Position numbers and translations under genes: made by a program. Shown here piece by piece: positions 7,067-63,457 of a stretch of DNA of 64,000 nucleotides. The stretch is from Chiloscyllium plagiosum (lineage: Eukaryota). The notes under the pieces are model-generated. The model did no database searches. It was given only the letters and a program-made list of their open reading frames with translations, and had not been told where the DNA came from. The number at the start of each line of letters is the position of its first letter. The first letter of the stretch is position 1. The stretch spans positions 69,240,608 to 69,304,607 of the forward strand of contig NC_057726.1 of assembly GCF_004010195.1 (NCBI RefSeq). Reading direction: 5' to 3'.

Positions 7067-7282
7067 TGTAAACCTTGGTTTGTTTTACTCAACTTGTTAC
7101 AATACACTCAGTGGACATCTAACCTTAGGTCAGATTTGAACCCAGACATTTCTTCCAAAAGTAGGAATGTTCGGTCTGTGTCTTAAGCACTAATTGTGAA
7201 ACTTTAAAATTGACATTCTTTGCGTTTTTAAATATGACTTATAAGAAACAATTTTAACAAGTTTCCTTTAATTAAATCCCAG

Positions 7283-7558
7283 TGCCGCCAGCTCCTGTGA
7301 AGATTACTCAGCAGTCCCATTTCACACTACTCTGTACAACAGTTGGATTCTTTCCGAAAGAGTTTAACATCACGTGGTATGAAAATAAAATGGAAATTAT
7401 GTTTGGGATTAACACAACTATACAACAGAACAAGGAAGGATTATATCAAGTTTCCAGTTATCTCAGCCCTGTGCAGAATGCATTGATGTATACCTGTGAG
7501 GTTTCTCATGTTTCTCTCAAAGTCCCAGCCATTGACAGCTATACAGTTCTTGATCAGG
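7283..7558 (+). CDS. Gene A exon: Ig C1-set domain of a VJ-C1 IgSF receptor
   Basis: Acceptor aaatcccag|, donor CAGG|gtaag, 276 nt, phase 1-1. Translation (V)PPAPVKITQQSHFTLLCTTVGFFPKEFNITWYEN...LYQVSSYL...YTCEVSH has C1-set hallmarks (LxC..FxP..I.W; YxCxVxH). Confidence 0.9.
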
Positions 7559-10131: not shown

Positions 10132-11818
10132 CACCACTCTGGCACACTTCTATAAATCACTTTTCCATACCCTTAATGCCTTAACATTCAACATCCTATG
10201 GAATGATTAAGTATACATTAATCTCACAGCTGCGATAGGGTTAGCTTCTAGCACCCAGTTAAGAATCTACAAATTCCTTCATTCTACCTCTTCACAAACC
10301 TTCTGGCAAGGGGCACAACTTTATATTATTCCACATCTGATCCCATTCAACATGATTCTAGCCTAACTAAAAATTTCTTTGAAATCTGTTCCTTGTATAT
10401 AGGATTGTTACAAGCATTGTATTTTCTAGCTGCAAGTGGGGGATGGTTAACTTCACTTTTGGAAGTTACGACCTCTATAACTAGGTTACCAAACTCATCA
10501 AAGTGTATTATATGCTTTTAACATCCACTGCTGGTTAATACCACTATGTACATTGTCACAGAATTAAAATTGAAATCACCAAACATGATGCTGATTCTGA
10601 AATCATTTTGGGAGTTGTTGATCCATTTTACCACTCTCCTTTTAATCACAGGGGCTTATGTTCATGATATTTCTGAACAAGTGATATCACGTCAAAGACT
10701 TTTTGAATCTGCATATTTAGATAAATAAGTACCTTCATCAAGCCCCTCACATAAGTTATTAAAGAGTTCAATTAAATTAATAAAATCTGAGCTGCTGTTA
10801 ATAAACAGTGCTTAGTTTCATTCATCAGCATTTTTTCCTACCTTCTGAAGTACCCCATGTGTTAACTTGTTTAACGATTTTTGTTCTGAAATAGACTGAC
10901 TGGCCTGTAGTCACTGGACTGAAACCTATCATCTGGCATATTATTTGGCTGTGATCCAAAAAAATAATGCTGTGATGAGGAACAGAATTGAAATTCAGGT
11001 CATCCACACAGTGGTATCAGGTCCTGTGAGATATATTTGATGCCACTCACTGGAATGCTTTTCTCACAGCCTGCGATTAAACGCTATGCAATTTAATTTC
11101 CACAGTGAGCAAACATTCTTTCCAATCAGTTTACTTTTCTGCACAGATGTACAAGTGATGGGGAACAAATAGAGTAAGCTGACAATGATACATGTCTTGA
11201 ACAAAAAGAAAAAGACAGGGGAGTTAATGCCTTTGTCGCTATCTGAAAGGATTCCGGTCTCACCATGATAGTTTTCAGAATTTAATTTTCAGAATTTCTG
11301 AATCCTCTTCAGAATTTAATGACCATGTACTTAAGACATATAAAATTGAATGTCTGTATTCATTAATGGTCACCATGAAACTACTACTGATTGTCATAAG
11401 ATGAATATGCTTCTCTGGTCTGGCTTACATGCACTCAAGGCCAACAGCGTGCAGTTGACTCCTATCTGCTTCCAAGAGATACTAAGAATATGCAGCAAAT
11501 GCTGTGTCTCAATTGACAGCATCAACACATGAGCAACTGAAATAAGAATAAACCGCATGTTTAAAATATGGCAAGTAATAGGATTAAAGATTTACTAACA
11601 CAAATAGATCATATGAGTTTTCCTAATTCCTTATTGAACTTGAAATTTTTAAAGCCATCACAATAATGTTACAAATTGGGAGGAAAGATGGAATTTCCTG
11701 AGTAAGTCACTGAGAGATGGTTACTTTAGTATGTGTGCTACGTCTTAACTGAAATTAATTAATCACTGCAATTTCTGCTCTGTAAGATGCTAACATTTGA
11801 CTTGTTCTCCCATTTTAG

Positions 11819-11929
11819 CTGACACTGGTACATTTCCAAAAGAATTGGTGGCTGGATGTGCTGTTGCAGGATTATTACTTTTAATGCTAGTAACTGTTGT
11901 GATACCTTGCAAATTAGATACAATTAAAG
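11819..11929 (+). CDS. Gene A exon: connecting peptide and transmembrane segment (uncharged core)
   Basis: Acceptor ttctcccattttag|, donor AAAG|gtaaga, 111 nt, phase 1-1. (A)DTGTFPKELVAGCAVAGLLLLMLVTVVIPCKLDTIK aligns with the TM exons of genes B and C. Confidence 0.88.
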
Positions 11930-12389
11930 GTAAGACTTGACACAATGTATCTTCAGAATTGCATTTCGATATTCAGTCACAGCTCAATGCTGCGGTGTCA
12001 GGAAGATTAACCAGTCGCGTCTGCGGTGTAGGTTTTCATTCGCTACTGTGTTGGGAGCGTCGTCCCTCTGAAACCCAGTAATCTAATGATAGAAGGAGCT
12101 GAAACCTGATCTATTCCTCAGGCTAATTTCTCTGAACCTGAAAATAAAGATGAACCCAATTTCATTCTTATGATAATGCAAGGCAGTGATCTGAACCCAG
12201 TAAATTACAATCAGATAATTCTGACATAGAACATAAACTTATTCTCATTCAACAATAGAAGTGAATGCAACTTTGCACTTATGATGAGAATGATCATGTT
12301 GCTTGATTAGAGCATAACTTTTGACTGACATGAAGCCAAATTATGTTTGTGATGAAATTGATCATGATGAAAATGATGTTTTCTAACAG

Positions 12390-12580: not shown

Positions 12581-14525
12581 GTTTGTTTCATGATCACTTT
12601 TTTTTGCCAAGTAGAAAGCTTTTACAGTGTACAACACACATACATCATTATCACCTGAACTGCTGCAAGATCACAGCACATCCCACTAAGTCTGTGGGTT
12701 CCCAATGTTGCCTTTGCCCTAAACACATGGCTAGTGATCACTCATTTCAACAATGATCCCCATACATACCTAACCCAGCAGCTTCTGCAAACAGTTGATG
12801 TTTACACTGTGTCACTGGATAGTTATTCAACTGTGTGAAGTGGCATTACCTCCACAATGTATAACAGCTATTCAGCAGGACAGGCGAAATCTATGCAGGG
12901 AAACAATTACAGCACCAGGTCTAAGATGTTTAATCATTTTGCAACAATTCTATTGTACAGTACCTGTGCACTATGAGTGGTTGCTACCATTATTCAAATT
13001 CAGCCCCAATCATCTCTGTTATGATGAATTTTGCAAACTGAGCCCTTGGTTTATTGTTTAACGCCACAAGGCTAGTCTTAGACACATTAATTGTGAATGA
13101 ATATACACAGATATGATTATTCTCCTTTGTCCCGTTTTGGCAAATTATTTGAAAATTACATTCATGACCATTTGTTCAGAAGCGGACGTTTCAGTTTTAG
13201 GTAATGAGTTTTGAAGTGTGGATAAATTGTGGCATCTGGGTAAGAATTTACTGAAGTGAAAGTGAGTCTGATGCAGCTTTGCTTTACTGCACTGAGACAG
13301 TAGCTTGCTCTTTTCTTTCAATATCAGATGAGGTAGCAAACAGAATGAGCATTGGTAATTGAACCTTAAACTTGAAATGGAGCCAGCAAGTCAAGAGAAA
13401 GGATCACAGAACTTCACTGTTAAATATAACCTCAATTCAGCGGAGGAGGTCATTTAGAAAAGAAAGTTATGAGAAGCAAATAAACAGGCTTTAAATGAAT
13501 GTAAGAAAAGCTGACATGCTCAAGAAAATCAATGGTTTAGCAGTATCTATGGAGAGAGAATTAGAGTTAACTTTGAAGTTAAATATGAAACTTGCTGAGA
13601 AATGAAAAGGGTTGTAAAATGGTCACTTTTGCTGTTAAAAATCATGCAACATCAGGTAATAGTCCAACAAGTTTATTTGGAAGTCCCAGTTGGACTATAA
13701 CCTGGTGTTGCGTGATTTTTGACTTTGCCCACCCCACTCCGACACCGACACCTCCTCATCACTTTTGCTGTTGACAGATGGCAAAGACTCCAATGGAACA
13801 GGTAGCGATGGTGCTAAAAGCAAAAGGCAAAAGCTGTGTGAATGGTGGTAAAGGTGCAGAAGAGTTGTAACACCTCTAACCGAGATATGTGAAATGGAAT
13901 GTAAAGTGAGCCTGCAGTGTGAACAGCGGAGACAATAGAATACGAAAAGGTGATAGTGTAGTTATCACGGTTATAATCATAGTGGAGGAAGAGGTCACAC
14001 CCTCATGGTATCTCTCAGGACACAAGAGAGTTGAAATGACCATAAATTTCCATTTGAAAAAGTGTGATGTGATAGTCTAAAGAAAGTCTGCTGATTCTTT
14101 ATACATATGTGTGTGCATATCTAATTTTTCCAAGGTTTGATGTTTGTCAACTTAAAGTAAACATTAATTATGTTAAAGTATACCAGAAACCACATGTTAC
14201 AACGAGACAGCTTTGCCAGTTTATCAACTCCAAGTGTGGGAGATTGTGCAAAGGTGGTGAAGAAAGGCATTTCATTAAAGACTCTATTCTACTGCTGGTA
14301 AAGATGACTATGTTCCTGTAATGATAGGAATTTTATCTGAGTTGTAGCTTAACCTGGCAGCTAAATGTAGTAGTACCATTAACAATAACATTATAACCCC
14401 ATGAGCAATGCTGTGTTATCCTTTGATCCTTTGATATCCTACCATACATTGTTAGCAATGTTTGATGCTATGTTATACTTTACAACTTAAGACTCAGATG
14501 GTGTTTCTATAATATTTGTCCTCAG

Positions 14526-14636
14526 AGAATACAAGAAGGAGAGGTGGGGCTTCTATCTTATGCTGCACTAAACTTCAGACAATACAAGAGAAGTAGAAAG
14601 AACAGACAAAAGGAAGACCAAACTTTGTATGCACAG
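14526..14636 (+). CDS. Gene A cytoplasmic exon with ITIM (LSYAAL) and first part of an ITSM (TLYAQ)
   Basis: Acceptor atttgtcctcag|, donor GCACAG|gtacaa, 111 nt, phase 0-0. RIQEGEVGLLSYAALNFRQYKRSRKNRQKEDQTLYAQ. Confidence 0.85.
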
Positions 14637-14776
14637 GTACAACTGTAAAACATAACCGTGCCTTTTAACTAGGACCACTCCAACACAAGTGTCAATTCTC
14701 ATTGATGTACATTGAATAGTTACAAGAAGTAATTTGAATAGGAGCTGCTCTTGATATTTCCTTATTGCTTTTACAG

Positions 14777-14908
14777 ATTAAACAAGGGACTGATGCTAAT
14801 CTGATTTACGTGTCTCTGGATATGACCGATTTACCAAAAACAGCAACAAGGAAAGAGACAGCAAAAATGAAGATAAACAAACCAAACATAGAATCCAGGA
14901 TTGCATAA
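14777..14908 (+). CDS. Gene A terminal coding exon with ITIM (LIYVSL) and stop
   Basis: Acceptor ttgcttttacag|. IKQGTDANLIYVSLDMTDLPK...SRIA* is homologous to the gene B last exon (TKQCTDGKLTYESV). Confidence 0.82.
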   Translation: MKQGTDANLIYVSLDMTDLPKTATRKETAKMKINKPNIESRIA

Positions 14909-21974: not shown

Positions 21975-24190
21975 GAACATCATTAGAACATTACAGTGCA
22001 GTATAGGCCCTTTGAAACCTGTGAAACCAATCTGAAGCCTGTCCATCCTATACTATTCCATGTTCATCCATATGTTTATCCAATGACCATTTAAATGGCC
22101 GTAAGGTTGGTGAGTCTACTGCTGGTATAGGCAGTATATCCCACACCCCTACTACTCTCTCAGCAAAGAGCTTACCTCTGACATCTGTTCTATATCCATC
22201 ACACCTCAATTTAAAACTCTGTCCTCTCATGCTAGCCATCACCATCCAAGGAAAAAGTCCACCCTATCTAATCCTCTGACCATCTTGGAAGTCTCTATTA
22301 AGTCACCTCTCAAACTTCTTCACTCAAATGAAACAGCTTCAGATGCCTCAGCCTTTCCCATAAGACCTTCCCTCCATACCACGCGACATCCTGGTAAATC
22401 TCCTCTGCATCCTTTCCAATGCTTCCATCTCCTTCGTATGATGCAGCAACCAGAACTGTACACAATACTCCAAGTGTGGCAGCACCAGAGTTTTGTACAG
22501 CTGCAACATGACCTCATGGCTCTAATCCCTCTACCAATCAAATCAACACATTTCATGCCTTCTTAACAACCCCATCAACCTGGGTGACAACTTTCAGGTA
22601 TCTGTGCACATGGAAAGCGAGATCTCTCTACTCATTTACTCTACCAAGAACCTTACAATTAGTCCAGTACTTTGTACCCTTGTTACTCCTTCCAAAGTAA
22701 ATCACCTCACAATTTTCCACATTAAACTCCATTTGCCACCTCTCAGTCCAGCTCTGCAGCTTATCTATGAACCTCTGTAACCTGTGACATTCTTCTGCAC
22801 TATCCACAATTCCACTGACCTTAGTGTTATCCACAAAATCTATTAACCCATCCTTCTATGCACTCATCCAGGTCATTTATAAAAATAAGAAGCAGCAGTG
22901 ACTCCGAAATAGATCCTTGCGTTACACCACTAGTAATTGAACTCCAGGATGAAAACTTCCCATCAACCACCACCCTCTGTCTTCTTACAGCAAGCCAATT
23001 TCTGATCCAAACAGTTAAATCACCCTCAATCCAACACCTCTGTACTTTGTGTAATAGCCAACTGTGGGGAAACTTTACTAAAATCCAAATACACCACATC
23101 AACCACTTTACCCTCATCCACCTGTTTGGTCACCTTCTCAAAGAACTCAGAAAGCTTTGTGAGGCATGACCTACCCTTTACAAAACCAAGTTAAAAATCA
23201 CACAACACCAGGTTATAGTCTAACAGGTTTAATTGGAAGCACACTAGCTTTCGGAGCGACGCTCCTTCATCAGGAAGCTCGTGTGCTTCCAATTAAACCT
23301 GTTGGACTATAACCTGGTGTTGTGTGATTTTTAACATTGTACACCCCAGTCCAACACCTGCATCTCCAAATCATATTTACAAAACCATGTTGACTATTCC
23401 TAACCAAATTAGTCCTTTCTAGATGATTATGAATCCTATCTGTTATAATCCTTTCCAACAATTTACCCATAACCAAAGTAAGGCTCACTGGTCTATAATT
23501 TGCTATCCTCAAGTCTTCTGGCACTATTCCCGTGGACAATGACAACATAAAGATCAAAGCCAAAGGACTTGCAATCTCCTCCGTAGCTTCCCAGAGAATC
23601 GTATGAAAAATCCCAGTCAGCCCAGGGGACTTACCTAATTTCACACTGTCCAGACCTGCTAACCCTTCCTCCTTAAGAACCTCAATCCCATCTTGTCTAA
23701 TAGTCCGTATCTCAGTATTCTCCTACAAAATGTTGTCTTTTTCCAATGTGAATACTGACGAAAATATTCATTTAGTGCCTCTCCTATACCTATAGAAAGC
23801 TTTAAGGTTTTACTTGATCCAATGTGCCAAAAACTACTCATGGCCACTGGCTCTTCTTAGCTCTCTCTTTACTAACGTGTAACTCTCAAGCTGCACCTTC
23901 ACATCTCATCTTTACATAATCATTCTTCTTCCTCTTGACAAGAGATTCAACTTCTTTAGTAAACTATGGTTCCCTATCTCAATCACGTCCTCCCTGTCTG
24001 ACAGGTACATACTTATCAAGAACACTCAGTAGCTTTTCCTTGAACAAGCTCCACATTTCAATTGTGCCCATTTCCTGCAGTTTCCTTCCCCATCGTATGT
24101 GTTCTAAACCTTGCATAATCGCAACATAATTGCCTTTCCCCCAGTTATAACTCCGGTTCTGCGTTATATACCTTTCCCTTTCCATCACGA
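21975..24190 (-). mobile_element. CR1 LINE ORF2 remnant
   Basis: Minus ORFs YNWGKGNY, KSPGLTGI, NYRPVSLT, WIRNWLAVRRQRVVVDG; 3' tail at ~21975. Confidence 0.88.
23189..23375. mobile_element. 187-bp palindromic PLE-derived insertion with 12-bp TSD and hammerhead core
   Basis: TSD TTTACAAAACCA at 23177-23188 and 23376-23387; ~60-bp inverted arms; minus-strand CUGAUGA-A-GGAGC-GUC-GCUCC-GAAAGCUA at 23245-23273. Confidence 0.85.
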
Positions 24191-28730: not shown

Positions 28731-28937
28731 TTAGACACTGTGTGATGGATCCTGTGTGACTGGCCCTTTGTTGGACATTGTTGTTGTTTGAACGAACTGG
28801 GCTTCACCAGTTGACTTTTTTATCTTGATCTTTGCATATTCCATTCCTCTTTTCTTATTGTTATTTTTCTCATTTTTCTGGGAAGTGGTAGGTTCCACAG
28901 ATTCATATGTCAGTTTACCGTCAGTACATTGTTTAGT
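28731..28937 (-). CDS. Gene B terminal exon with LTYESV (ITIM) and MEYAKI (ITIM-like) motifs
   Basis: Acceptor ttgttgctccctcag|. TKQCTDGKLTYESVEP...GMEYAKIKI...HSV*. The preceding intron is 123 nt, versus 140 nt in gene A. Confidence 0.78.
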   Translation of the reverse strand, partial: TKQCTDGKLTYESVEPTTSQKNEKNNNKKRGMEYAKIKIKKSTGEAQFVQTTTMSNKGPVTQDPSHSV

Positions 28938-29060: not shown

Positions 29061-29166
29061 CTGGGCATAGTTGATGGACTCTTCTACATGTCTGAATTTT
29101 ACAGATTTGCTGTGTTTACTGAAACTAAGAGCAGCAAATGAAGAGTTTTTTACATGTATCCCATTC
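29061..29166 (-). CDS. Gene B cytoplasmic exon homologous to the gene A ITIM exon, 1-nt out of frame
   Basis: Acceptor tcatcatatcag|, donor GCCCAG|gtatta, 106 nt. Phase 0 reads EWDTCKKLFICCS* (TAG 29125-29127). The +1 frame reads NSSFAALSFSKHSKSVKFRHVEESINYAQ, matching gene A LLSYAALNFRQYKRSRKNRQKEDQTLYAQ. Confidence 0.8.
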
Positions 29167-29569
29167 CTGATATGATGATAGATGTTTGGGGAAATACTAT
29201 TTGCATATCACATGTCAAAAACACCATGAAGTAATACAAAAACCAACATGGTTAATCCTTACCAGGAGAGAGGTATGATGGTGCTGTGGGTTTCAAGAGG
29301 TCATGTTTTACTTTTTATGGGGCAGTGAGAGGTTGTAAGGCAGCGGTGCCCAGCCAGCTATGAAGACCACTTGAATAAACAGCTTGTATGGACTTGGGGA
29401 ATTTTTGAAGTGGGAACAATGGAAGAAGTCTAGGTGTGGCCAGCTGTCACACACCATGCATTCTAGATTTTTGTCTTTGGGTTTAGCTTGAAGCAGAAAC
29501 TATTAGAGTCTTCGTAAATATCTCTCAACTGCTTCTTTTTCTCAATTTAGCATTAGAATCCCTATAATT

Positions 29570-31235: not shown

Positions 31236-31279
31236 CTGCCCCTCCAACTGGTCTAGTATGTTTTCGGTAATTTCTGCTC
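31236..31279 (-). CDS. Gene B cytoplasmic micro-exon (44 nt, phase 1->0)
   Basis: Acceptor ttcattctccaatag|, donor GGGCAG|gtttga. (G)AEITENILDQLEGQ has the same length and phases as gene C exon 63458-63501. Confidence 0.8.
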
Positions 31280-31888: not shown

Positions 31889-31996
31889 CTCCAGTTTTGC
31901 CTGATGCCCATTGCTTGACAAGAATTAGAAACAATAGAATTATTAACCCGCCCACTGCACATCTAGACACCATGACGTAGGGAAAATTCCTGTTAC
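31889..31996 (-). CDS. Gene B transmembrane exon carrying an Arg in the N-terminal part of the TM
   Basis: Acceptor ttctatatcttctag|, donor GGAG|gtaagt, 108 nt, phase 1-1. NRNFPYVMVSRCAVGGLIILLFLILVKQWASGKTG. Confidence 0.9.
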
Positions 31997-33820: not shown

Positions 33821-34052
33821 ATTTCTCACTCTGAATCGTGCAGCTGACACTGGCTGGGAGCTGGAGGGCTGTGTGGGAAATCCGGCACATATAAACCAAT
33901 CCGCTCTCCAGATGATTGAGAACGCTGAAAACTTTAAATAAACTCCCATCTTTCCATACTTTCGTGGCGTTGATCTCAGATGTAATTAGGATATCATTTT
34001 TATACCAAATGACGTGAATTTCCTGTGGGAAAAAATGAGCTATCATGCAGAG
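33821..34052 (-). CDS. Gene B C1-set exon remnant (A-strand and canonical acceptor not found)
   Basis: LCMIAHFFPQEIHVIWYKND...LFKVFSVL...VYMCRISH aligns with the C1 of genes A and C. Phase-1 donors are possible at 33830 (|gtgaga) or 33821 (|gtgaac). No phase-1 AG exists upstream of the first Cys before an in-frame stop. Confidence 0.75.
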
Positions 34053-36239
34053 GTTCGCCCCAGCCGAACAGAACATGTTCATTTTCATTCTGCTTTCATA
34101 ATCATAAGTTTGTGAGAATTAATTATACCTTGCAATGCCGTTACCTGGACAAAGTTGATGTTTATGGGAATGTAGAAATAGAGAGGAATAAGTGCTCGTG
34201 ACACCTGCATCCAAAGACTGAACAAACACAACCGAATATTTCCATCACAAGGAAAGACTTGTGGAGATTGAAAACATCGACCAGGCGCATTCTGATTAAC
34301 TGAGCCTTAAATTGGGTTCCACTCCGTAAACGGTGGCTTCCATCAATTAATATTTGTATGAAGACAAGAAGATCATTTCGATACTGAACTAATTTGTTTT
34401 GAAAATATTACACCTTCTTAGGAAGTGTTTGTCGACTGCTGAACTGAAAATGAGGTGGGGTCCAGCCTGCTGTGTCTGTTCAAACGATCTAATTTCTCAA
34501 CTCTTTATAATATTTTTCTACAATTATTGTTCTGTCATTGGCGCAAGGAATTTATTACTCCTTCTGCCGTTGCCCTTGAGAAGGTGGTGGTGGAGGTGAC
34601 TTCTTGAACTGCTGTAATCCATTTGTCTAATGCCATTAAGGAGGGAAATGCTGGATTTTGACCCAGTGACACTGAGGGAATCGTGATAGATTGTAATCTG
34701 TATTTTCGAAGATCCTTGGCAACATTCTTGGTGTATATAATGAATTTCTGAGACTTTGTCCCAACGTGAGGCTTTGTTGGAAAAAATGTGTGAAATTAGT
34801 TTTGAACCTTTTCTCATCCTCTAGCATCGCTGAAATGTGATCTCTGGGCGCTTGATGTTTCTTCATTCCCTTTCCAGTTGCGTTTGAGACTGTTAAGACT
34901 GAAACGCACATTATCAGCTGCATTTCAAGGTGTGTTACTCCTATCTCACATCATTTTCTGCGTTACTTATTGGTTTGTATCAAGGTTTCTTCTAAATTAG
35001 TCTGGACCATAGTGACTATTCTATGTATTCCAACATAGAGCCTATTTTTCTAGCAGGTGCACGGCGAAAGAGCGTGAAAGAGCAAGTGAAAGAGCGTGCA
35101 CGGCTTCTAACAACCTCAACTTCGTGTTCTTTAATCGAAACTACATTAGATTGACAAATTGGCAGCTGGAATTTTAAAAAATTCATTCACGGATGTGGGT
35201 GTCGCTGACTATGTTCGAATTTATTCCCCCAGCTACATCGGAATAGCAACCAACATAATCAAAGACCCCTTCCCGATTCCCCCGCCGCCGCCACACACAC
35301 ACAAACATACCTGCTACACTCTCTTCCACTCTCTTCCGTCGGGCTGAAGTTATAAACGTTTGTATACACATATGAACAGATTCTTATCCGGTGTTATCAG
35401 ACATTTGAATGGACCTCTTTAATGTTAATGCTGATCTCTCCCTGTCCCTTCTAGACAGCTGTAACATAGTATCCTGCACTGTGTTCTGTTACCCTGATGC
35501 ACTTGTATGGTACCATCTGCCTGTAGAGCACGTAACACACCTTTCCCTGTACCTCGATAAACGTGAGAGTAATAAATAAACCTCTCCAACTGCCCTGAGA
35601 ACAGTTAAAGGCAACCACTTTGCAGTGACTCGGGAATCACACGTAGGCCAGACTAGGCAAGGGGGACAATTTCCTTCCCCAAAGGAGTTTTGTGTAGCAG
35701 ATGGACTTTTCCAGCAATGGAAAACAGTTACCATGGCGGGATGTCAGCATGTGACTCCATATAATACCACTAGGCCCTTGCCATCGGGCACTAATTGTGA
35801 ATGTGTTCTCATAAGCAATACATCAAACTACATTCCACTTCCAAAAGCCCCCTTTAAAATTGGGCATTTTATTTCGAGGAGTTAAACCTAATCCCTGATG
35901 TATTCGCTTTACCACCCTATCACCCCATACCCCATGCTGACTGAAAACTATTTTGTCAAAGCATTTCTTTGTTCATCTCGGTTTTCACAAAATGCTTTAT
36001 GCATTAAGTTTGCGAAGCATCAGGCTATGATGCCATTCCAGTTCTCTAATTACCTAAATAGCATGCAGTGGGCAAAAAGTTATCCTCTGAAGGAACAGTA
36101 TTTCTTTTGTGGGTCGTTCCTATGGATGACCTTGTCTCATGAAATTGTCTTCAATTCATCCCTGTTTCAATTCATGTCTTGCAGAATAGCATTGGATTAC
36201 AGTAAAGACTTAATTTCACTGAGGCGATCCCATGATTCT

Positions 36240-37980
36240 ATGATACGCCAGGAGGTAGAAAAGGTGTGCAAAAAAGACAACGTTACAGTGATTATGGGGG
36301 AGTTCAATACGCAGGTGAAATGGGAAAATCAAGTTTGGTGTTGGATTGCTAGAAAAAGATTTTTTGGAATGTCTACTAGATGACCTTTTGGAGCAGCTTG
36401 TGGTACAGTCTACTAGGGAACTGGCAATACTGGATTTAGTGCTGTGCAATGAGGCAGACTTGATAAGGGAGCATATGATGAAGGAATCCTTCAGAGGCAG
36501 TGATCATAAGTCTCTGGGAAGCTAGAGAGGAGATTGCAGGTCCTTGGGCTTTGACCTTTGTGTTGTCATTGTCTGCCAGAAGACTTGAGGATAGCAAATG
36601 TCCCCTTGTTCAAGGTGGGGAGCAGAGACAACACTGGTAATTATAGACCAGTGAGCCTTACTTCAGTTCTGGGTAAAGGGTTGGAAAGGATTAGAGCAGA
36701 TAGGATTTATAATAATCTAGAAAGAAATAATTTGGTTATGAATTGTGAACACGGTTTTGGAAGGGTAAGTCAGGCCTCACAAAGCTTTTTGAGTTCTTTG
36801 AGAAGGTGACCAGACAGGTGAATGAAGGTAAAGTGGTTGATGTGGTGTATATGGATTTCAGTAAAGGTTCCCTACGGTTACCTATTACACAAAATACAGA
36901 GGCATAGGATTGAGGGTGATTTAGCAGTTTGGATCAAAAATTGGCTTGCTGTAAGAAGGCAGCGAGTGATGGTTGTTGGGAAATGTTCATCCTGGAGTTC
37001 AGTTACTAGTGGTGTATTGCAAAGATCTAGTTTGGGGTCACTGCTGTTTCTTATTTTTTATAAATGACCTGGATGAGAGTGTCGAAGGATGGGTTAGTAA
37101 ATTTTGTGGATGACACTAAAGTCTGTGATGAGTGCAAAAGGATATTGTAGGTTACAAAGGGATACAGATCAGCTGCAGAGCTTGGCTGAGAGTTGGTAAA
37201 TGGAGTTTAATGTGGAAAAGTCTGAAGTGATTCACTTTGGAAGGAGTAACAGGAATACAGAGTCCTGGGTTAATGGTCAGGTTCTTGGTAGTGTGAATGA
37301 GCAGAGAGATCCCAGTGTCCATGCGCATCGATACCTGAAAGTTCTTTATTCTGGTTGATAGGCAGGCATACAATGTGTTAAGTTCTATTGGTAGAGGGAT
37401 TGAGTTTTGGAGCCAGGAGGTCATGTTGCAGCTGTACAAAACTCTGGTGCAGCCTCACTTGGAGTATTGCGTACACTTCTGGTTGCCACATTATAGGATG
37501 GGTGTGAAGCATTGGAAAGAATGCAGAGGAGATTTACCAAAATGTTGCCTCGCATGGAGGGAATGTATTATGAGGAAAGGGTGAGGTACTTCAGGCTTAA
37601 AGAGAAGAAGTTTGAGAGACGACTTAATAGGGACTTACAAGATGGTCAGAGGATTAGATAGGGTGGACTGTGAGAGCCTTTTTCCTTAAATGGTGATGGC
37701 TAGCACGAGGGGACATAGCTTTATTTTGAGGGGTGATAGATGTGGGACAGATGCCAGAGGTAGATTCTTTACTCAGGGAGTAGTAATGGCGTGGAACGCA
37801 CTTCCTGCAACTGTGGTAGACTCGCCAACTTTAAGGGCATTTAAATGGTCATTGGATAAATTATGGATGAAAATGGAATAGTGTCGATTAGATGCACTTC
37901 AGATTGGTTCCACAGGTCAGTGCAACATCAAGGGCCGAAGGGTCTGCATTGCGTTGTAATGTTCTATGTTCTAAATTCTA
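36240..37980 (+). mobile_element. CR1 LINE ORF2 remnants
   Basis: TVIMGEFN, GNYRPVSLTSV, LYKTLVQPHLEYC; ttctatgttcta tail. Confidence 0.88.
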
Positions 37981-39259: not shown

Positions 39260-41410
39260 CTAAATTGGAGGAAGGCTAATTTTGACCGCATTGGGCAAGA
39301 ACTTTAAAAAGTTGATTGGGGGCAAATATTTGCAGGTAAAGGGACAGCTGGAAAATGGGAAGCCCTCAAAAATGAGATAACGAGAGTCCATAGACAGTGT
39401 ATTCCTGTTTGGGTGAGACAAAGCTGGTAGGTGTAGGGAATGCTGGCTGAGAGAGAAATTGAGGTTTTGCTCAAGAAAAAAAGGAAGCATATGTCAGATA
39501 TAGACAACAGGGATCGAGTGAATCCTTAGAAGAAGATAAAGGCAGTAAGAGTATACATAAGAGGGAAATCAGGAAGGCAAAAATGGGACATGAGATAGCT
39601 TTGGCAAACACGAGAATCCAAAGGGATTTTATAAGTATATTTAAGGATAAAAGGTTAACTAGGGAGAGAATAGGGTCCCTCAAAGTACAGCAAGACAGCC
39701 GACGTGTGGAACTGCAGGAGATGGGGAGATACTAAATGAGTATTTTGCATCAGTGTTCACTGTGGAGAAGGACAGAGAAGATATAAAATGTCGGGAAATT
39801 GATAGTGACATCTTGAAAAATATCCATGTTACAGAGGAAGAGGTGCTGGATGTTTTAAAATGCGTAAAAGTGGATAAATCCCCAAGAACTAATCAGTTGT
39901 ACCCCAAAACTCTGGGAAGCAAGGGAAGTGATTGCTGGGCCTCTTGCTGAGATATTAGTAGTCACAGGTGAAGTGCCAGAATACTAGAGATCGGCTAATA
40001 TGGTGCCACTATTTAAGTAAGGTGGCAAAGAAAAACCAGGGAACTATAGACTGGTGAGCCTCATATCAGTGGTGAACACGTTGCTGGAGGGAATCCCGAG
40101 GGACAGGATTTACATACATTTGGAAAGGAAAGGACTGAATAGGGATAGTCTGCATGTCATTGTGTGTGGGAAATTGCATCTCATGAACTTGGTTTATTTT
40201 TTTTGAAGAAATAGCGAAGAGGATTGATGAGGACAGATTAGTGGACATGATCTAAAGAGATTTTGGTAAGGCGTTCGACAAGGTTCCTCGTGGTAGACGG
40301 GTCAGCAAGATTAGATCTCGTAGAGTACAGGGAGAACTAGCCATTGGTTACAGAACTGGCTCGAAGGTAGAATGCAGAGGGTGGTCATGGAGGGTTGCCT
40401 TTCAGACTGGAAGCCTGCGACCAATGGTGTGCCACACGGTTCAGTGCTGGGTCCACTGCTTTTTGTCATTTATCTAAATGACTTGGGTGTGAACATAGGA
40501 GATATAGTTAGTAAGTTTGCAGATGACACCAAAATTGTAGATATAGTTGACAGAGAAGAATGTTACCTCAGAGTGTATTGGGATCTTGATCAGATGGGTC
40601 AATGGGTCAAGGAGAGGCCATTGAAGTTTAATTTAGGTAAATGTGAGGTGTTGCACATTGGAAAGGCAAATCAAAACAGGACCTATACACTTAATGGTAA
40701 TGTCCTAGGGAGTGTTGCTGAACAAAGAGACCTTGGAGTGCGGGTTCATAGCTCCTTGAAAGTGGAGTCTCAGGTAGATAGGATGATGAAGAAAGCATTT
40801 GGTATGCTTTCCTTTATTGGTCAGAGCACTGAGTATAGGAGTTGGGAGGTCATGTTGCGGCTATGCATGACATTGTTTAGGCCACTTTTGGAATATTGCA
40901 ATTCTGGTCTCCTTCCTATCGGAAAGATGTTGTGACACTTGAAAGGGTTCAGAAAAGATTCATGAGGATGTTGCCAGGGTTGGAGGATTTGAGCTATAGG
41001 GAAAGGCTGCATTTGTGTGCCTATTTTCCCTGGTGCATCAGAGACGTTATAGACGTCTATAAAGTCATGAGGGGCATGGATATGGCAAATGTACAATGTC
41101 TTTTCCTTGGGGTGGTGGAGTTCAGAACCAGAGGGGTGAGAGGGGTAAAATTTAAAACGGACGTCAGGACAACTTTTTCATGCAGAGGGTGGTGTGAGAA
41201 TGGAATTAACTGCACGAGGATGTGGTGGAGGGTGGTGCAATTACAGCATTTAAAAGCATCTGGAGGAGTATATAAATAAGAACAGTATAGAGTTATATGG
41301 GCCAAGTGCTGACAAATGGCATTAGATTAGGTAAGGATACCTGGTCGACATGGACATGTTGGACCAAAGGGTCAGTTTCCGTGCTGTACATCTCCATGAC
41401 TCGATGATTC
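39260..41410 (+). mobile_element. CR1 LINE ORF2 remnant
   Basis: 187-aa ORF GVPHGSVLGPLLFVIYLNDL...SKFADDTK; 3' tail at ~41400. Confidence 0.9.
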
Positions 41411-41545: not shown

Positions 41546-41866
41546 GATGTACGATCAGCCCTGTCCCATTTCCATTGAAAATCTTCCTGCCCGAGACCCT
41601 AATGCTGCAATAATAGATTCCAGAGTCCTGGAAATGTGGATTCAGCAGCTGGAGCTCAGTAGATCCTTGCTTGAATGGTAACATTATTTTCCTTGGCTCT
41701 GCTGTCAGATCCAAAGTTTGGCCCTGGTCGCCTTTCTGCCAGGAAACTTCTACTGCTGAGTTATGACTGAATAGCGGAATGGAACAATACATGGACACAT
41801 TTGTACCTTCCACTTCAGTCAGGCATGCAGAGATCTGAGTTACAGAGAAAGGGGTTTCTTTGGCAG
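41546..41866 (-). CDS. Gene B exon: germline-joined VJ-type Ig V domain (NKp30/NCR3-like features)
   Basis: Acceptor cttttgctgacag|, donor CATC|gtgagt, 321 nt, phase 1-1. ...SVTQ...VSMYC...VSW...LQL...DSGIYYC...FNGNGTGLIVH contains a J-like GxGTxLxV motif. Confidence 0.92.
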
Positions 41867-41967
41867 CTGTCAGCAAAAGAAGAAACACACACACATATAT
41901 AAGCATGAAACCTTTCAATGCAGAAATGTCTGCAGTTTCCTTTACTCACTTTGCTATTTATAAAGCA

Positions 41968-52638: not shown

Positions 52639-52830
52639 GTCCCGTGCTCCTCTTTCCAAAGAATGACCGTTATTTCACTTTGTTTCTGAATATGTATATA
52701 TATATATGACAGCTTTTTCTATTGCTGTTTTGTTTTGTCAATACGTGCTTATTTTTCAAACATCTTATAGGTTTATTAAGGATTATTTAATTCGATAGTT
52801 AGCTATTAATTTTGTTTTGTTTTGCAACAG

Positions 52831-53142
52831 CCTCTCACAATTCTCAGCTGACGGTGAGACAAGATCGAGAGTGCGCTGTCACGAGAGGCTCCTTCATTAA
52901 ACTTTATTGCGCTTTCCCCATCTTTCGAGACAAGAAGCCAGTGAAAGTGCAGTGGTGGAGAAATGGGAGAGACGGGTTCTTGGAGGAAAGTTTGGACCGC
53001 AGAATCCAGCTTTATTTCCTCGAACGGGGAGGAGCTGTCTTACAACTGGCGGACGTAAGATTGGAGGACGCTGGGGTTTATTACTGCAGAGTGACACACA
53101 ATGTGGCTGCAAACGGAACCGGCACCAACCTGGTCGTGTTCG
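52831..53142 (+). CDS. Gene C exon: germline-joined VJ-type Ig V domain
   Basis: Acceptor ttttgcaacag|, donor TTCG|gtaaga, 312 nt, phase 1-1. ...LTVRQ...IKLYCAFPIF...VQW...LQLADVRLEDAGVYYC...NGTGTNLVVF. Confidence 0.93.
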
Positions 53143-54362
53143 GTAAGAATCAGGGAGGGGGAAAATACCGCATTCGTTGTGCGATTGTTTTAATCTGAAT
53201 AATTGTCAAAATGTGGATCTAATCTACAAAGAAAGAATTTGTCATCTTCTGTTCCAATCTTAACATTGTAAGATGTCGGAGTGGAGGTAGACGTTTAGGG
53301 TCTGCTCCGCCAGTCAGTAGTATCATGGCTGATTAGATAAGCCTTAATTCCACTTTCCTACCTTTTCCCGATGAACCTTGAACTAGTTAGCAAAAAAACA
53401 TCTATCTGTCCCAGTGTGGAATGCACTTACAAACCAAGTCTCAAGAACCCTCTGTGGAAAAGTATTCTGCAGATTCTCGACCTCTAACAGAACAGTTTCT
53501 ACTTTACCTTTGTCTTTATTAAGCAACCTCTTATTGTGAGATTATGCCCTCTGTTCATAGCTTCTCTCACAAGGGAAAGTAGCCTTTCTGCATCTGTAAT
53601 GTCAAATCCACCAAGGTTCTTCTAAAATTCAATAAAGTCGCCTCTCAGTCCTCTGTAATCCAGCGCATACAAACCCAATATGGTCCTTGTTATTAGACTT
53701 GGGCTACTGCAGATACCTTGCTGAAGAAATGTTAGGGTTCTAAATGAAAACGAGAACGTGTTTACTCAAACGTTACATGTTCTTCTGCTGAGTTTCCATT
53801 AACTTCGGTTTATTTAATGAGTGCGAGTTTTACTCAGTGTGTAACATGTGTTTTGGGTGGGGATTTTTTGTTGTGCTCTCAAAAGCGATCGCCTCAGAGG
53901 TGGGAGCATCTCAGAAAGAAAAGCACGGAGAAGGACTACACATCTCATAATTGTTATGAGCATTCAGAATGTGATGTTTTGTATATTTAAATACTTGGGG
54001 GAATGGAAAATACTAAGTCACCGAAATAATCAACTAATTGATTTCAGAGGCAGAATCAAAGGCCAGTGGAAAATTTAAATCAACATTTCCTTTAATTCCA
54101 GCTCCATGACGTTAAAACTGCGACATTAATTATAACGTTTCTCCTTTTAACTTTCAAAACATGTGTGCTTTCTCTTGGATATGAATCTTTTACCAGCAGA
54201 ATTTTTGAACTGCACGGTGTCACCTATAAACACCCGAAATGTCGAGTAACGAACGCCTTTTGCGGTTTTCTGTTTCTGTTTGACCTTGTGACAGAATTTG
54301 CTTCACATTTTTCAAATTAAATGCAGGCTTCAAAACAAATGTTTCCTTTCCTTTTTGTTCAG

Positions 54363-54665
54363 TCCCTCCGACTCCACTCAAACTGGTCAAACTGCCGGAG
54401 GACGGCTCAGCTTTCCCTCCAACCCTTCTTTGCACAACTGCTGCGTTTTACCCAGACAACCTGAACATCACTTGGTACAAAAATGATTCAGAAATTGCAA
54501 CCGGGATGGAACATGTCAAACTGCAGAATTCCATCGGGCTCTATGAGGTTTCCAGCAACCTGATTGAGACAGAACCCGTTCAGAGCGGTACCGTTTACAC
54601 TTGTCAAGTGTCTCACATCTCACTTCGGACGCCAGCAAATGTCAGCTACACTTTCATTAAATTGG
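54363..54665 (+). CDS. Gene C exon: Ig C1-set domain (missing from the ORF track in this frame)
   Basis: Acceptor cctttttgttcag|, donor TTGG|gtaggt, 303 nt, phase 1-1, open. (V)PPTPLKL...LLCTTAAFYPDNLNITWYKND...LYEVSSNL...YTCQVSHISL...SYTFIKL. Confidence 0.93.
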
Positions 54666-54749
54666 GTAGGTTAATTCAATGATATTAACTTTGTTGCAAT
54701 GAGATTGGAATAAATGTAATTTTCGCACCGCCACATTCTCAGCGGTGCA

Positions 54750-61616: not shown

Positions 61617-62606
61617 CAATAAAGCTGTTGAAATTTAGAGAATGGGAGGCGATTTAAAACAAAATGGTGAACCCATTGTCGGCATTTCTGTGAGATGAAA
61701 GATACATGGTGCATAGTACCTCAAAATGGAATGCTTTCCACGTATTTCTGCATTCAGCCATTAAAGGAGTCACTGGTGATGGGGCATTTTATCCATTGCC
61801 AGCTAACGACACTACTTCTGCCATCATGATGGAAGTGAGGTCATTGATGCAACATTTTAAGATGCTTGTTTCGAGAACACTGGGTTGAAGAAATTCAGCA
61901 ATTTTGTCACCGAATCAACGGATTCGCCTCCGACAAAAATAACTTTGTTTTTGTCCTACAAGTTAGCAGTGAAGGGTATCCCTTTAAAACATGAATTAAT
62001 ATTTTTTTCTGAATGCAGTACCTGCCTATGAATTTCCAAATTGCAGTGATGTACAATTTTGCTGATACCAACTATTCCCAGCGCCCTATGCCTATCCAGT
62101 TTGGAATACTAGGTATTTCACGCAAGCATTTAAATATAAAATATATAAAATAGACTGAGATAAAGGAACTTTTTACAATATTGCACAATGTAATGGATTT
62201 ACTACTTTCTTCCTTGACAGATGCTCCAGGTTTGCTCAGTATTTCAAACAGTCGATGCTTTTTTTTCAATTAATTTCAGATGCACTGTTCTCACTGGAGG
62301 CAAAGCTTTCCTCAAACGAATTGGATGGCACAAGCAAAAGGGAGGCTGCAAATTAAAGTGTGAATGATCATGCCAAAATCCCCTATCAGCAATGCATCTG
62401 TCACAAATTGTTTAAATGTATTGACTTTGTATGTTAGCCAGAATCGTCAGATAAAACATTTCAGTGTCTCATATGTATAAAGCTTAAATGTCATCCGAAT
62501 TATTCTGCCCAAATTAAATCTAAAACTTGTCATAGCTGGAATAATTTGCGATTCATTATTATTCTATAATGCTGCAAACAAATTGAATTTGCACCTATCC
62601 TCACAG

Positions 62607-62699
62607 ATTCCAATGATAACATTTACCCAAAGATTTTCGGTTGTTTGGGAGGTGGATTGATATTATTCCTCATCGTGATGTACACACTCAGGCGAATTG
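62607..62699 (+). CDS. Gene C transmembrane exon (uncharged core)
   Basis: Acceptor cctatcctcacag|, donor ATTG|gtaaga, 93 nt, phase 1-1. (D)SNDNIYPKIFGCLGGGLILFLIVMYTLRRI. Confidence 0.88.
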
Positions 62700-63457
62700 G
62701 TAAGAATCAGATTCTATAAACGCTACCGAGTATTGAGGACTACTTCAGATGCAATGTCCTGCTGAGTAACTGTCAAATGGCGCCTATGTACCCTGCCCCA
62801 ACGGTGTCTTCAATTTGATGCCACTGTATCAATTATTGATATCTCCAACTGGGGGGGGGGGACACTCAGATGAAAACATAGAACATAGAACAACAGAGTA
62901 CAGGAACAGGCCCTTCAGCCTGCCAAGTCTGTGCCGATGATGATAATGCCATTGCAAACGAATCCCGAATGCCTGCACGTGATTGGTATCCCTTTATTGT
63001 CTGGGTGATAGAACATAAAGGGGCACAAAACCACCAAAAATGGGTCCTGGTATGACTAGCAGTCGAATTACTTGCTTGCTCTCCAGCAGGATTGGATTGC
63101 TGCTTGAACTAAAAGTTCAGTATTCCGCCCAACGCCACCCTTCCCTCCGTTATCTCTCAATGCGGGATTGCAGCGGCGTTAACCTCTGTCAGCATGATTC
63201 ATGTTTTACACTGAATGCAACAATGGTTTCAAATTTTAACCTGTTAATTGAGTCAGATTATATCCAATCTACATCATGAGATTTATTCTTAACCCAGATG
63301 CTTGTAATTTACCAGAATGGATGAATAATTTTACGTAGACTTCTTAATTATTCTTTGGCCATTCAGAGGAAATACCGCTGTGATATTGGTTGTAACATTT
63401 TAATATGTAATTGCAATAGAATTAAAGTACTTGTTGATTGATTTATATCTCATTTAG

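What the first reader, a model, noticed from the sequence alone, without database searches (positions are those of the whole stretch)
31962..31964. Single-codon Gly->Arg change puts a basic residue in the gene B transmembrane helix
Seen: the TM alignment is A ELVAGCAVAGLLLL, C KIFGCLGGGLILF, B VMVSRCAVGGLIIL. A (GGA) and C (GGT) have Gly before the conserved Cys; B has AGA, one substitution from GGA. Established: an Arg near the extracellular end of the TM mediates FcR-gamma/CD3-zeta pairing in NKp30, NKp46, LILRA, GPVI, FcalphaRI and KIR2DL4. Inference: gene B may be an activating receptor arising from an inhibitory paralog. Alternatively it is neutral decay in a pseudogene, or the Arg sits outside the bilayer.
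Basis: partly seen in the sequence, partly recalled or inferred. Interest (0 to 1): 0.82.

Follow-up and report, generated by a model that had tools for sequence, protein, structure and literature searches.

The report
Arginine in a shark receptor's membrane helix
One of three related shark immune-receptor genes has swapped a conserved glycine for arginine in its membrane anchor, at the spot where relatives that look like activating receptors carry arginine, but two of its exons are dead and it may be a decaying gene.

Summary
Gene B (minus strand) reads AGA (Arg) at 31964-31962, directly before the conserved membrane Cys; genes A and C read GGA and GGT.

Both available orthologues, from Chiloscyllium plagiosum and Hemiscyllium ocellatum, have Gly there. 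So the Arg is derived in the window's lineage. It sits at position 4-6 of the predicted helix.

The genes belong to a V(J)-C1-TM receptor family of sharks, rays and chimaeras. Members come in ITIM-tailed and charged-TM, short-tailed forms. Arg at this same position recurs in Heterodontus, Hemitrygon, Hypanus and Mobula models, always with short ITIM-less tails.

Gene B is remodelled. Its C1 exon and first ITIM exon are dead and fast-evolving. The V, TM, micro and last ITIM exons are intact, in phase, and evolve at the orthologue's rate.

The best reading is a V-only, TM-Arg receptor part-way from inhibitory to activating (0.38). A whole-gene pseudogene is nearly as likely (0.30).

The scan's first readers noted similar Arg/Gly pairs on other DNA of this genome; I did not test those.

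The parts
31962..31964 (-). AGA Arg codon, directly 5' of the conserved TM Cys codon
   Evidence: Orthologues and most relatives have Gly here.
31889..31996 (-). Gene B transmembrane exon, 108 nt, phase 1 to phase 1. Peptide: NRNFPYVMVSRCAVGGLIILLFLILVKQWASGKTG.
   Evidence: The family-profile score is 37.8 bits, against 35.2 and 34.6 for the orthologues.
41547..41906 (-). Gene B leader plus V(J) exon. It has an ATG at 41906-41904, a signal-like MLIYVCVFLLLLTAA, a V-set domain ending in the J-like motif GNGTGLIVH, and the donor C|gtgagt (phase 1).
   Evidence: Pfam V-set E=5.8e-10. Identity is 87% to Chiloscyllium and 82% to Hemiscyllium.
33831..34170 (-). Gene B C1 exon remnant, dead. The last 73-74 codons (34052-33831) are open. 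The first ~20 codons are displaced into another frame ('IPININFVQ') with extra bases. No AG acceptor gives an open phase-1 entry.
   Evidence: Pfam C1-set E=2.5e-9. B-specific changes 7 against 1. Profile score 80.4 bits against 96.5 and 92.8.
31236..31279 (-). Gene B cytoplasmic micro-exon, 44 nt, phase 1 to phase 0. Peptide: (G)AEITENILDQLEGQ.
29061..29171 (-). Gene B first ITIM exon remnant, dead. The only AG lies 5 nt inside the ancestral exon start, so the exon would begin at 29166. Entered in phase 0 it reads EWDTCKKLFICCS then a stop. The ancestral frame shows SSFAAL (Tyr to Phe) and INYAQ.
   Evidence: B-specific changes 11 against 2.
28734..28937 (-). Gene B last coding exon. It has a strong acceptor and enters in phase 0. 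Peptide: TKQCTDGKLTYESV...MEYAKIKI.... The ITIM LTYESV is at 28913-28896. The stop lies 19 codons later than in the orthologues.
   Evidence: B-specific changes 3 against 6. Profile score 53.4 bits against 48.2 and 46.7.
11818..11930 (+). Gene A TM exon, with Gly GGA at 11854-11856 before Cys. Gene A's ITIM exons lie near 14520-14642 and 14774-14902.
62606..62700 (+). Gene C TM exon, with Gly GGT at 62639-62641 before Cys. Gene C's V exon lies within 52803-53195 and its C1 exon within 54284-54679.

Best explanation
Gene B is a lineage-specific, remodelled descendant of an inhibitory V(J)-C1-TM-ITIM receptor. Its orthologue is Chiloscyllium LOC122558696.

Shown:
- A Gly conserved in the orthologues became Arg at position 4-6 of the membrane helix, directly before the conserved TM Cys.
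- The C1 exon and the first ITIM exon can no longer be spliced in frame, and they have decayed.
- The leader/V, TM, micro and last ITIM exons keep open frames, good splice sites, compatible phases and orthologue-like rates of change.
- Other members of this cartilaginous-fish family carry Arg at the same position, always with short tails lacking ITIMs.

Inferred:
- The gene still makes a V-only, NKp30-shaped type I membrane protein by joining V to TM to micro-exon to the last exon.
- Its buried Arg pairs with the membrane Asp of a dimeric ITAM adaptor of the CD3-zeta, FcR-gamma or DAP12 class.
- The receptor therefore signals positively or dually. It would be KIR2DL4-like if the LTYESV tail is kept. 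It would be purely activating if the cryptic acceptor at 29166 truncates the tail to about 37 residues.
- On this reading it is an inhibitory-to-activating conversion caught part-way.
For: The codon and exon are real, with canonical splice sites.

Gly is present in both orthologues. LVSGC is present in 6 of 8 aligned full-length relatives, with LVFGC in a seventh.

Arg is at position 4 of the best 19-residue hydropathy window. Only 15 apolar residues lie between it and the Lys. PMC8102735 (passages) places the FcR-gamma-pairing Arg of KIR2DL4 at TM position 4.

Family precedent for Arg next to the TM Cys:
- Heterodontus P0175 has LLISRCAWGG with a 34-residue tail.
- Hemitrygon P0054 has LLISRCVWFG with a 33-residue tail. 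These two align through STDR..LLISRC.W.
- The Hypanus P0124 / Hemitrygon P0137 orthologue pair both have LRCAMG.
- Mobula P0180 and P0181 have IFRSALGG.
- Mobula P0037 has ICRSIGGG.

Among 71 distinct TM strings, 13 of 14 with a basic residue have tails of 50 residues or fewer without an ITIM. Only 10 of 57 without a basic residue do so (Fisher p=2e-7, not corrected for relatedness).

Constraint is mosaic. Outgroup-polarised changes, B against Chiloscyllium, are 18:4 in C1 plus ITIM1 (binomial p=0.004) and 14:16 in V plus TM plus micro plus ITIM2 (p=0.86). By exon, the counts are 7:1 and 11:2 in the dead exons, against 3:2, 3:3, 1:2 and 3:6 in the intact ones. The contrast gives Fisher p=0.005.

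B's TM and last exon fit a family profile better than the orthologues do; its C1 fits worse.

The phases allow an in-frame V-TM-micro-last-exon product. Isoforms that skip C1 or skip ITIM1 are annotated in relatives: P0004, P0009, P0007, P0135 and P0145.
Against: There is no expression or splicing evidence.

Two of six coding exons are dead. The orthologue's initiator position is not ATG in B; a downstream ATG has to serve. The stop is displaced by 19 codons.

B's V exon scores 5-12 bits below the orthologues against the family profile. Its V branch (0.10) is longer than Chiloscyllium's (about 0.03).

The rate counts are small, many sites could not be polarised (33), and they rest on protein only. 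No dN/dS was possible.

GGA to AGA is one of only five non-stop amino-acid-changing single-base neighbours of GGA. By my own rough estimate, a neutral hit producing Arg at this codon has a chance of a few per cent, which is not negligible.

If the last exon is used, B would be the only family member seen with both a TM Arg and an ITIM tail.

The adaptor partner is unknown. PMC4016189 (passages) reports no FcR-gamma homologue in sharks.
Confidence: 0.38

Rival explanations
1. Gene B is a pseudogene. After the C1 and ITIM1 exons were lost, or for an unrelated reason such as loss of the promoter or start codon, the whole gene fell silent. The Gly-to-Arg change is then one more neutral substitution.
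For: The C1 exon has no usable acceptor and carries an internal frame break. The ITIM1 exon has lost its acceptor and its Tyr. The ancestral initiator position is not ATG. The stop is displaced. No RNA holder is listed. No protein of this gene turned up in the protein databases, but gene C's product is absent too, so that absence carries no weight. GGA to AGA is a single transition.
Against: Four exons keep open frames, canonical splice sites and mutually compatible phases. Their amino-acid change is not faster than in the Chiloscyllium orthologue (14:16), whereas the two dead exons are clearly accelerated (18:4). The TM and last exon fit the family profile better than the orthologues do. The Arg falls exactly where charged-TM relatives carry theirs.
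Confidence: 0.3
2. Gene B is expressed and still inhibitory. The Arg lies close enough to the outer leaflet to snorkel to the interface. It pairs with no adaptor and is tolerated or nearly neutral. Signalling runs through the remaining LTYESV ITIM.
For: The Arg is only 4-6 residues into the helix. The last ITIM exon is intact, in phase and conserved. A 2014 screen reported no FcR-gamma homologue in sharks (PMC4016189, passages).
Against: In this family a basic residue at this depth goes with loss of the ITIM tail in 13 of 14 distinct TM types. It has also been kept between a shark and a ray and between two stingray genera, which argues that it is used. Gly is otherwise strongly conserved there.
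Confidence: 0.2
3. The AGA is a base-call or assembly error, or an allele private to the sequenced animal.
For: Nothing positive. It could not be excluded, because no reads were laid.
Against: Eight runs of the same species, from two studies, hold 43-80% of the sampled words of the 5.5-kb stretch, so the locus is reproducibly assembled. That says nothing about this one base. Single-base substitution errors are rare in modern assemblies (general knowledge). The scan's first readers report the same AGA/GGA contrast in other paralogues of this genome (unchecked).
Confidence: 0.05

Closest known systems
KIR2DL4 and the macaque activating KIRs derived from it
   Same: Arg about four residues into the TM helix. 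In KIR2DL4 this is combined with a cytoplasmic ITIM. The activating forms arose from inhibitory genes by recombination plus a splice-site mutation (PMC8102735; abstract and passages). Gene B has Arg at position 4 of its best 19-residue window, splice-site losses and one remaining ITIM.
   Different: There is no sequence relationship. KIRs have C2-type domains, whereas gene B has a V(J) domain with or without C1. Pairing with FcR-gamma is shown for the KIRs and untested here.
NKp30 (NCR3)
   Same: If C1 is skipped, gene B gives a single V domain with a J-like motif, a TM Arg and a modest tail, which is the NKp30 layout (recalled). NKp30 is cited as a non-rearranging VJ gene of the MHC paralogy group (PMC10751288, passages).
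   Different: No NKp30 chain was among the 32 PDB sequences matching B's V exon at E<=0.01, nor among the best 60 shown of the 5862 PDB sequences that matched the full orthologue at E<=0.001. The ancestral form of gene B has a C1 domain and ITIMs.
SIRP-alpha / SIRP-beta paired receptors
   Same: An inhibitory ITIM form and a charged-TM, short-tailed form share similar V-C1-type ectodomains (SIRP facts recalled). RefSeq calls many family members 'tyrosine-protein phosphatase non-receptor type substrate 1-like'.
   Different: These genes have one C1 domain, not two. No SIRP chain was among the 60 best PDB matches shown, which were Ig heavy and light chains, CD276, MHC class I and class II beta chains, and UrIg2. 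The RefSeq names are automatic and inconsistent: tapasin-related, NCR3LG1-like, Ig lambda-like, CD276.
PRARP (non-rearranging VJ-C1 IgSF genes with ITIMs; Fu et al. 2019)
   Same: A germline-joined VJ domain, one C1 domain, a TM and an ITIM-bearing tail (PRARP facts recalled). PRARP is listed with NKp30 among MHC-linked VJ genes in PMC10751288 (passages) and PMC11599192 (passages).
   Different: No PRARP sequence was available in any tool output, so orthology is untested. PRARPs are described from bony fish to birds (recalled). I know of no paired charged-TM forms, and I did not see the paper.
UrIg / UrIg2 of elasmobranchs
   Same: A non-rearranging VJ domain plus C1-type domains in sharks (PMC12227049; abstract and passages). 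UrIg2 V-C1-C2-C3 (9dmx) matches the orthologue P0133 at E=6e-9.
   Different: Per PMC12227049, UrIg2 has three unique C domains plus repeats, nine in nurse shark. The present genes have a single C1, ITIM tails or charged TMs, and many paralogues.

Membership tests
Activating member of a paired activating/inhibitory IgSF receptor family (functional class) | A basic residue inside the TM helix | tested here: met
   Arg is at position 4 (19-residue window) or 6 (21-residue window). Fifteen apolar residues lie between it and the Lys.
Activating member of a paired activating/inhibitory IgSF receptor family (functional class) | A short cytoplasmic tail without an ITIM | tested here: inconclusive
   The ITIM1 exon is dead. 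The last exon, with LTYESV, is intact and in phase. Use of the cryptic AG at 29166 would give a tail of about 37 residues with no ITIM. Without RNA the choice is unknown.
Activating member of a paired activating/inhibitory IgSF receptor family (functional class) | A closely related inhibitory counterpart with an uncharged TM | tested here: met
   The orthologues P0133 and P0145 have Gly and ITIM tails. Heptranchias P0154 (R..DH TM, 8-residue tail) and P0147 (GC TM, ITIM tail) lie 0.055 and about 0.065 from a shared, unresolved node in the V-domain tree.
Activating member of a paired activating/inhibitory IgSF receptor family (functional class) | Physical association with an Asp-bearing ITAM adaptor | not testable with these tools
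   No adaptor sequence could be retrieved. PMC4016189 (passages) found no FcR-gamma homologue in sharks in 2014.
Chondrichthyan V(J)-C1-TM receptor family (RefSeq 'SIRP-like / tapasin-related-like / NCR3LG1-like' models) | A V-set domain with a J-like G-x-G-T motif, a C1-set domain (Y-x-C-x-V-x-H), a TM with a Cys near its outer end, and homologous tail exons | tested here: met
   Pfam V-set and C1-set. phmmer gave 132 hits, the best from elasmobranchs. Exon-by-exon tblastn against P0133. V-domain tree: B with Chiloscyllium and Hemiscyllium, support 100/99.
NKp30 (NCR3) | Sequence orthology of the V domain | tested here: not met
   No NKp30 chain was among the 32 PDB matches to B's V exon (E<=0.01), nor among the best 60 shown of 5862 matches to P0133.
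NKp30 (NCR3) | A single V domain, a TM Arg and a short tail | tested here: inconclusive
   This holds only if the dead C1 exon is skipped. The tail length depends on splicing that was not observed.
SIRP family | A V-C1-C1 ectodomain and sequence relatedness to SIRP-alpha | tested here: not met
   There is one C1 exon per gene. No SIRP chain was among the 60 best PDB matches shown.
PRARP | A non-rearranging VJ-C1-TM-ITIM architecture | tested here: met
   The architecture is shown for the orthologue and for genes A and C. The definition of PRARP is recalled, not read.
PRARP | Sequence orthology or synteny with vertebrate PRARP genes | not tested
   No PRARP sequence appeared in any tool output. 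The searches found no paper describing them in the held library.
Processed or unitary pseudogene | Disabling lesions and neutral evolution across the whole gene | tested here: inconclusive
   Two exons are disabled and accelerated. Four are intact and not accelerated. No dN/dS and no RNA evidence was obtained.

The most novel reading that the evidence does not exclude
The Gly-to-Arg change one residue before the TM Cys is a recurrent, one-step switch. Cartilaginous fishes have used it repeatedly to turn inhibitory, antigen-receptor-like V(J)-C1 receptors into adaptor-coupled activating ones. The evidence is that it has been kept for a very long time in a shark/ray 'LLISRC' lineage, and has arisen again in stingrays, mobulids and here. 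On this reading gene B is an intermediate caught with Arg already in place, one ITIM exon already dead and one ITIM still present. That would place charge-based receptor-adaptor assembly for innate-type paired receptors at the base of jawed vertebrates. It would also imply an Asp-bearing partner in sharks other than the FcR-gamma chain that was reported missing there.
Probability: 0.3. Interest if true: 0.75.

Novelty: new member of a known kind. Interest (0 to 1): 0.52.

Why it matters
Paired activating and inhibitory receptors, and the way activating forms arise from inhibitory ones, are well studied in mammals and birds: a charged TM residue plus loss of the tail. They are hardly studied at all in cartilaginous fish, the oldest lineage with Ig, TCR and MHC immunity.

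This locus shows the same logic in a receptor family whose ectodomain has the V(J)-C1 layout of an antigen-receptor chain. Across the family the same TM position is hit repeatedly.

If gene B is expressed, it is a natural intermediate with the Arg gained, one ITIM exon lost and one kept. It would also be a handle for finding which ITAM adaptor sharks use, given a report that FcR-gamma is absent from them. If gene B is a pseudogene, the single codon is unremarkable, and the interest shifts to the family-level pattern.

Tried and rejected
1. DNA-level comparison of gene B with A and C (blastn). Only shared repeats matched. The paralogues are too old for codon-level polarity, so I turned to orthologue proteins.

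I used protein-level relative-rate counts instead and family-profile scores.

No read-level result exists.

4. Is gene B annotated as a protein? No 100% match appeared. But gene C's product is absent too. The window's species is probably not in those databases, so the absence means nothing.

5. NKp30 or SIRP membership. Rejected on PDB sequence searches.

6. PRARP. The search returned only unrelated uses of the acronym. The search found only a citing paper. Membership is untested.

7. The B7H6/NKp30 evolution paper and the 2015 review were not held.

8. Shark adaptors in the literature. Only PMC4016189 was relevant. The searches turned up no description of this shark family as paired receptors. 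That is not proof that none is in print. Supplements were not consulted.

9. A second, R..(D/E)H-type TM exon was looked for by eye only, in the in-frame read-through after the three C1 exons. No pattern search was run. None was seen.

10. I had considered that hemiscylliid orthologues show B's TM to be shortened. Rejected: B has the family-normal length, and the hemiscylliids carry a 2-residue insertion.

Full report
**The observation.** The window is vertebrate DNA rich in LINE and SINE fragments. It holds three paralogous immunoglobulin-superfamily genes.
- Gene A, plus strand: C1 exon at 7276-7587, TM exon near 11850.
- Gene B, minus strand: 41906 down to 28734.
- Gene C, plus strand: V exon within 52803-53195, C1 within 54284-54679, TM near 62640.

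Pfam scores the exons as V-set and C1-set. On the minus strand 31964-31962 reads AGA. It lies inside a 108-nt exon (31996-31889) with a canonical acceptor and donor, which translates to NRNFPYVMVSRCAVGGLIILLFLILVKQWASGKTG. Gene A has GGA and gene C has GGT at the aligned codon before the Cys.

**Polarity.** A, B and C share no exon-level DNA similarity, so 'one step from GGA' cannot be read off the paralogues. I searched B's V exon against 1.84 billion representative proteins. There were 132 hits at E<=0.001. The best single-domain hits are elasmobranch proteins of 240-450 residues.

The 90% cluster of the top hit contains a full-length 358-residue protein, P0133 (XP_043563426.1, Chiloscyllium plagiosum). 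A search with P0133 found a Hemiscyllium ocellatum model, P0145, whose second half is the same gene. B's V exon is 87% and 82% identical to them. It groups with them at 100/99 support in a V-domain tree.

Both orthologues read NFPYVLVSGCAVGG, with Gly. LVSGC is also present in Heterodontus, in two Heptranchias genes and in Scyliorhinus, and LVFGC in a Chiloscyllium paralogue. The Arg is therefore derived in the window's lineage, from an ancestor that had Gly and an ITIM tail.

**Position in the membrane.** Only 15 apolar residues lie between the Arg and the stop-transfer Lys. The full apolar run from Tyr to Val is 21 residues. The best 19-residue hydropathy window is MVSRCAVGGLIILLFLILV, which puts Arg at position 4. 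PMC8102735 (passages) gives position 4 for the FcR-gamma-pairing Arg of KIR2DL4 and position 9 for the DAP12-pairing Lys of human activating KIRs. The Arg is thus within the span but shallow, so snorkelling cannot be excluded.

**What gene B looks like now.** Exon-by-exon tblastn with P0133 and reading of the DNA give the following.
- Leader plus V exon, 41906-41547. It is open, has an ATG and a signal-like start, and has a phase-1 donor. The orthologue's own initiator position is not ATG in B.
- C1 exon. The last 73-74 codons are open and 82% identical to the orthologue. The first ~20 codons are displaced into another frame, with extra bases. Every AG that would give the required phase runs into a stop, and those after the stop give the wrong phase. 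The exon cannot be included in frame.
- TM exon. Intact, phase 1 to phase 1.
- A 44-nt micro-exon, 31279-31236. Intact, phase 1 to phase 0.
- First ITIM exon. The only AG lies 5 nt inside the ancestral start. Entered in phase 0 it reads 13 codons and then a stop. In the old frame the first ITIM Tyr is Phe.
- Last exon, 28937-28734. It has a strong acceptor, enters in phase 0, and keeps LTYESV and MEYAKI. Its stop comes 19 codons later than in the orthologues.

Skipping the two dead exons keeps the reading frame. Isoforms that skip C1 or skip ITIM1 are annotated in relatives: P0004, P0009, P0007, P0135 and P0145.

**Alive or dead?** I could not get orthologue DNA or reads, so I counted outgroup-polarised amino-acid changes instead.

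| Exon | B-specific: hemiscylliid-stem changes |
|---|---|
| V | 3:2 |
| C1 | 7:1 |
| TM | 3:3 |
| micro | 1:2 |
| ITIM1 | 11:2 |
| last exon | 3:6 |

Another 33 sites could not be polarised. Pooled against Chiloscyllium, the dead exons give 18:4 (binomial p=0.004) and the intact exons 14:16 (p=0.86). Against Hemiscyllium the figures are 7:3 and 15:17; that model lacks ITIM1. Fisher's test on 18:3 against 10:13 gives p=0.005.

I also scored the exons against family profiles built without the three orthologues.

| Exon | B (bits) | Chiloscyllium | Hemiscyllium |
|---|---|---|---|
| TM | 37.8 | 35.2 | 34.6 |
| Last exon | 53.4 | 48.2 | 46.7 |
| V | 122.7 | 134.8 | 128.0 |
| C1 | 80.4 | 96.5 | 92.8 |

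This mosaic is what one expects if two exons were dropped long ago and the rest stayed under constraint. The counts are small, however, and a recently dead gene would look similar.

**The family.** RefSeq names for the relatives are automatic and contradictory: SIRP-like, tapasin-related, NCR3LG1-like, Ig lambda-like, CD276, and MHC class I or class II-like. The family spans sharks, rays and a chimaera.

It contains two kinds of charged TM. The first is a distinct TM type, R-F/L-I/L-L...I-I-V-D/E-H, with tails of 8-35 residues. It is seen in Chiloscyllium P0005, Heterodontus P0014, Carcharodon P0033, Scyliorhinus P0088, and Heptranchias P0154, P0163 and P0167. In the V-domain tree, P0154 lies 0.055 and the ITIM-tailed P0147 about 0.065 from a shared, unresolved node.

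The second kind is the ordinary Cys-type TM with Arg at or next to gene B's position:
- Heterodontus P0175, LLISRCAWGG, tail 34 residues.
- Hemitrygon P0054, LLISRCVWFG, tail 33. These two align through STDR..LLISRC.W.
- The Hypanus P0124 and Hemitrygon P0137 orthologues, both LRCAMG.
- Mobula P0180 and P0181, IFRSALGG.
- Mobula P0037, ICRSIGGG.
- The first half of P0145, GCALRA.

I surveyed the 185 stored proteins. Of these, 97 fell to my filters and 71 distinct TM strings remained. Among strings with a basic residue, 13 of 14 have tails of 50 residues or fewer without an ITIM. Among the rest, 10 of 57 do (Fisher p=2e-7). The test is not corrected for relatedness and rests on gene models. On the V tree the Arg-type needs at least 3 changes over 4 rows, and the R..DH type 5 over 5.

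Arg at this position therefore appears to be a used, recurrent state in this family, tied to loss of the inhibitory tail.

**Comparison with known systems.** PDB sequence searches put the orthologue closest to Ig heavy and light chains, CD276, MHC class I and class II beta chains, and UrIg2 (E from 4e-12 to 1e-8). No NKp30 or SIRP chain is among the matches shown. UrIg and UrIg2 have several C domains (PMC12227049; abstract and passages). PRARP has the same recalled architecture, but I could not test orthology. The family works like a paired receptor family. Gene B resembles KIR2DL4, or the short-tailed KIRs, in logic but not in descent.

**The partner.** I examined no adaptor. PMC4016189 (abstract and passages) reports that FcR-gamma was not found in cartilaginous fish in 2014. 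If that is still true, it would leave CD3-zeta or a DAP12-like chain, both of which I only recall to be plausible.

**Verdict.** The codon is real and derived. It lies in the membrane span, at a position that this family uses for charged-TM members, in a gene that has lost two exons but keeps four in good order. I put 0.38 on a live, remodelled receptor whose Arg recruits an adaptor. I put 0.30 on a pseudogene, 0.20 on a live inhibitory receptor with an inert Arg, and 0.05 on an error or private allele.

First readers of this scan noted similar AGA/GGA TM pairs and TM-Arg genes elsewhere on this chromosome. I could not test those notes.

Noticed in passing
P0005, P0014, P0033, P0088, P0154/P0155, P0163, P0167 (relatives; not found in the window): A second, conserved TM type of the form R-F/L-I/L-L...I-I-V-(D/E)-H. 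It follows directly on the C1 domain and has tails of 8-35 residues. It is seen in seven models from five shark species. In the V-domain tree it sits beside ITIM-tailed genes (P0154 close to P0147 in Heptranchias; P0005 sister to P0151 in Chiloscyllium). It looks like the family's main activating-type anchor.
   Followed up: partly
window 7276-7587 / 8671-8919 and 7658-8041 / 8990-9373: Gene A's C1 exon 3' part and the following ~380 bases recur about 1.33 kb downstream. Two open stretches of 128 codons are identical. This is a recent tandem duplication inside gene A's intron.
   Followed up: no
P0145 (Hemiscyllium ocellatum RefSeq model, 546 aa): This model fuses two neighbouring family genes. 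The first half is a V-C1-TM member with Arg three residues after the TM Cys (VVGCALRALAIL). The second half is the gene B orthologue, with the first ITIM exon skipped.
   Followed up: partly
window 31889-31996 compared with P0133 and P0145: The two hemiscylliid orthologues carry a 2-residue insertion (FP) in the middle of the TM helix. Gene B and every other aligned relative lack it.
   Followed up: yes
window 28734-28790: Gene B's reading frame runs 19 codons past the position where both orthologues stop (...GESQLV stop). The Carcharodon model P0027 also extends there.
   Followed up: no
window 14520-14642, 14774-14902, ~15047: Gene A's tail exons carry LSYAAL, TLYAQ|V, LIYVSL and LTYASL. As another first-reader note says of a neighbouring gene, the ...YAQ exon ends exactly at the donor, so the ITIM's +3 residue is completed by the next exon.
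   Followed up: no
window 59661-61339 (minus) and 2500-3800, 22600-23700, 36500-37600, 40300-41300: Several LINE-type reverse-transcriptase and endonuclease fragments fill the introns and spacers, among them a 376-codon and a 185-codon open stretch. They account for most of the long open frames in the window.
   Followed up: no
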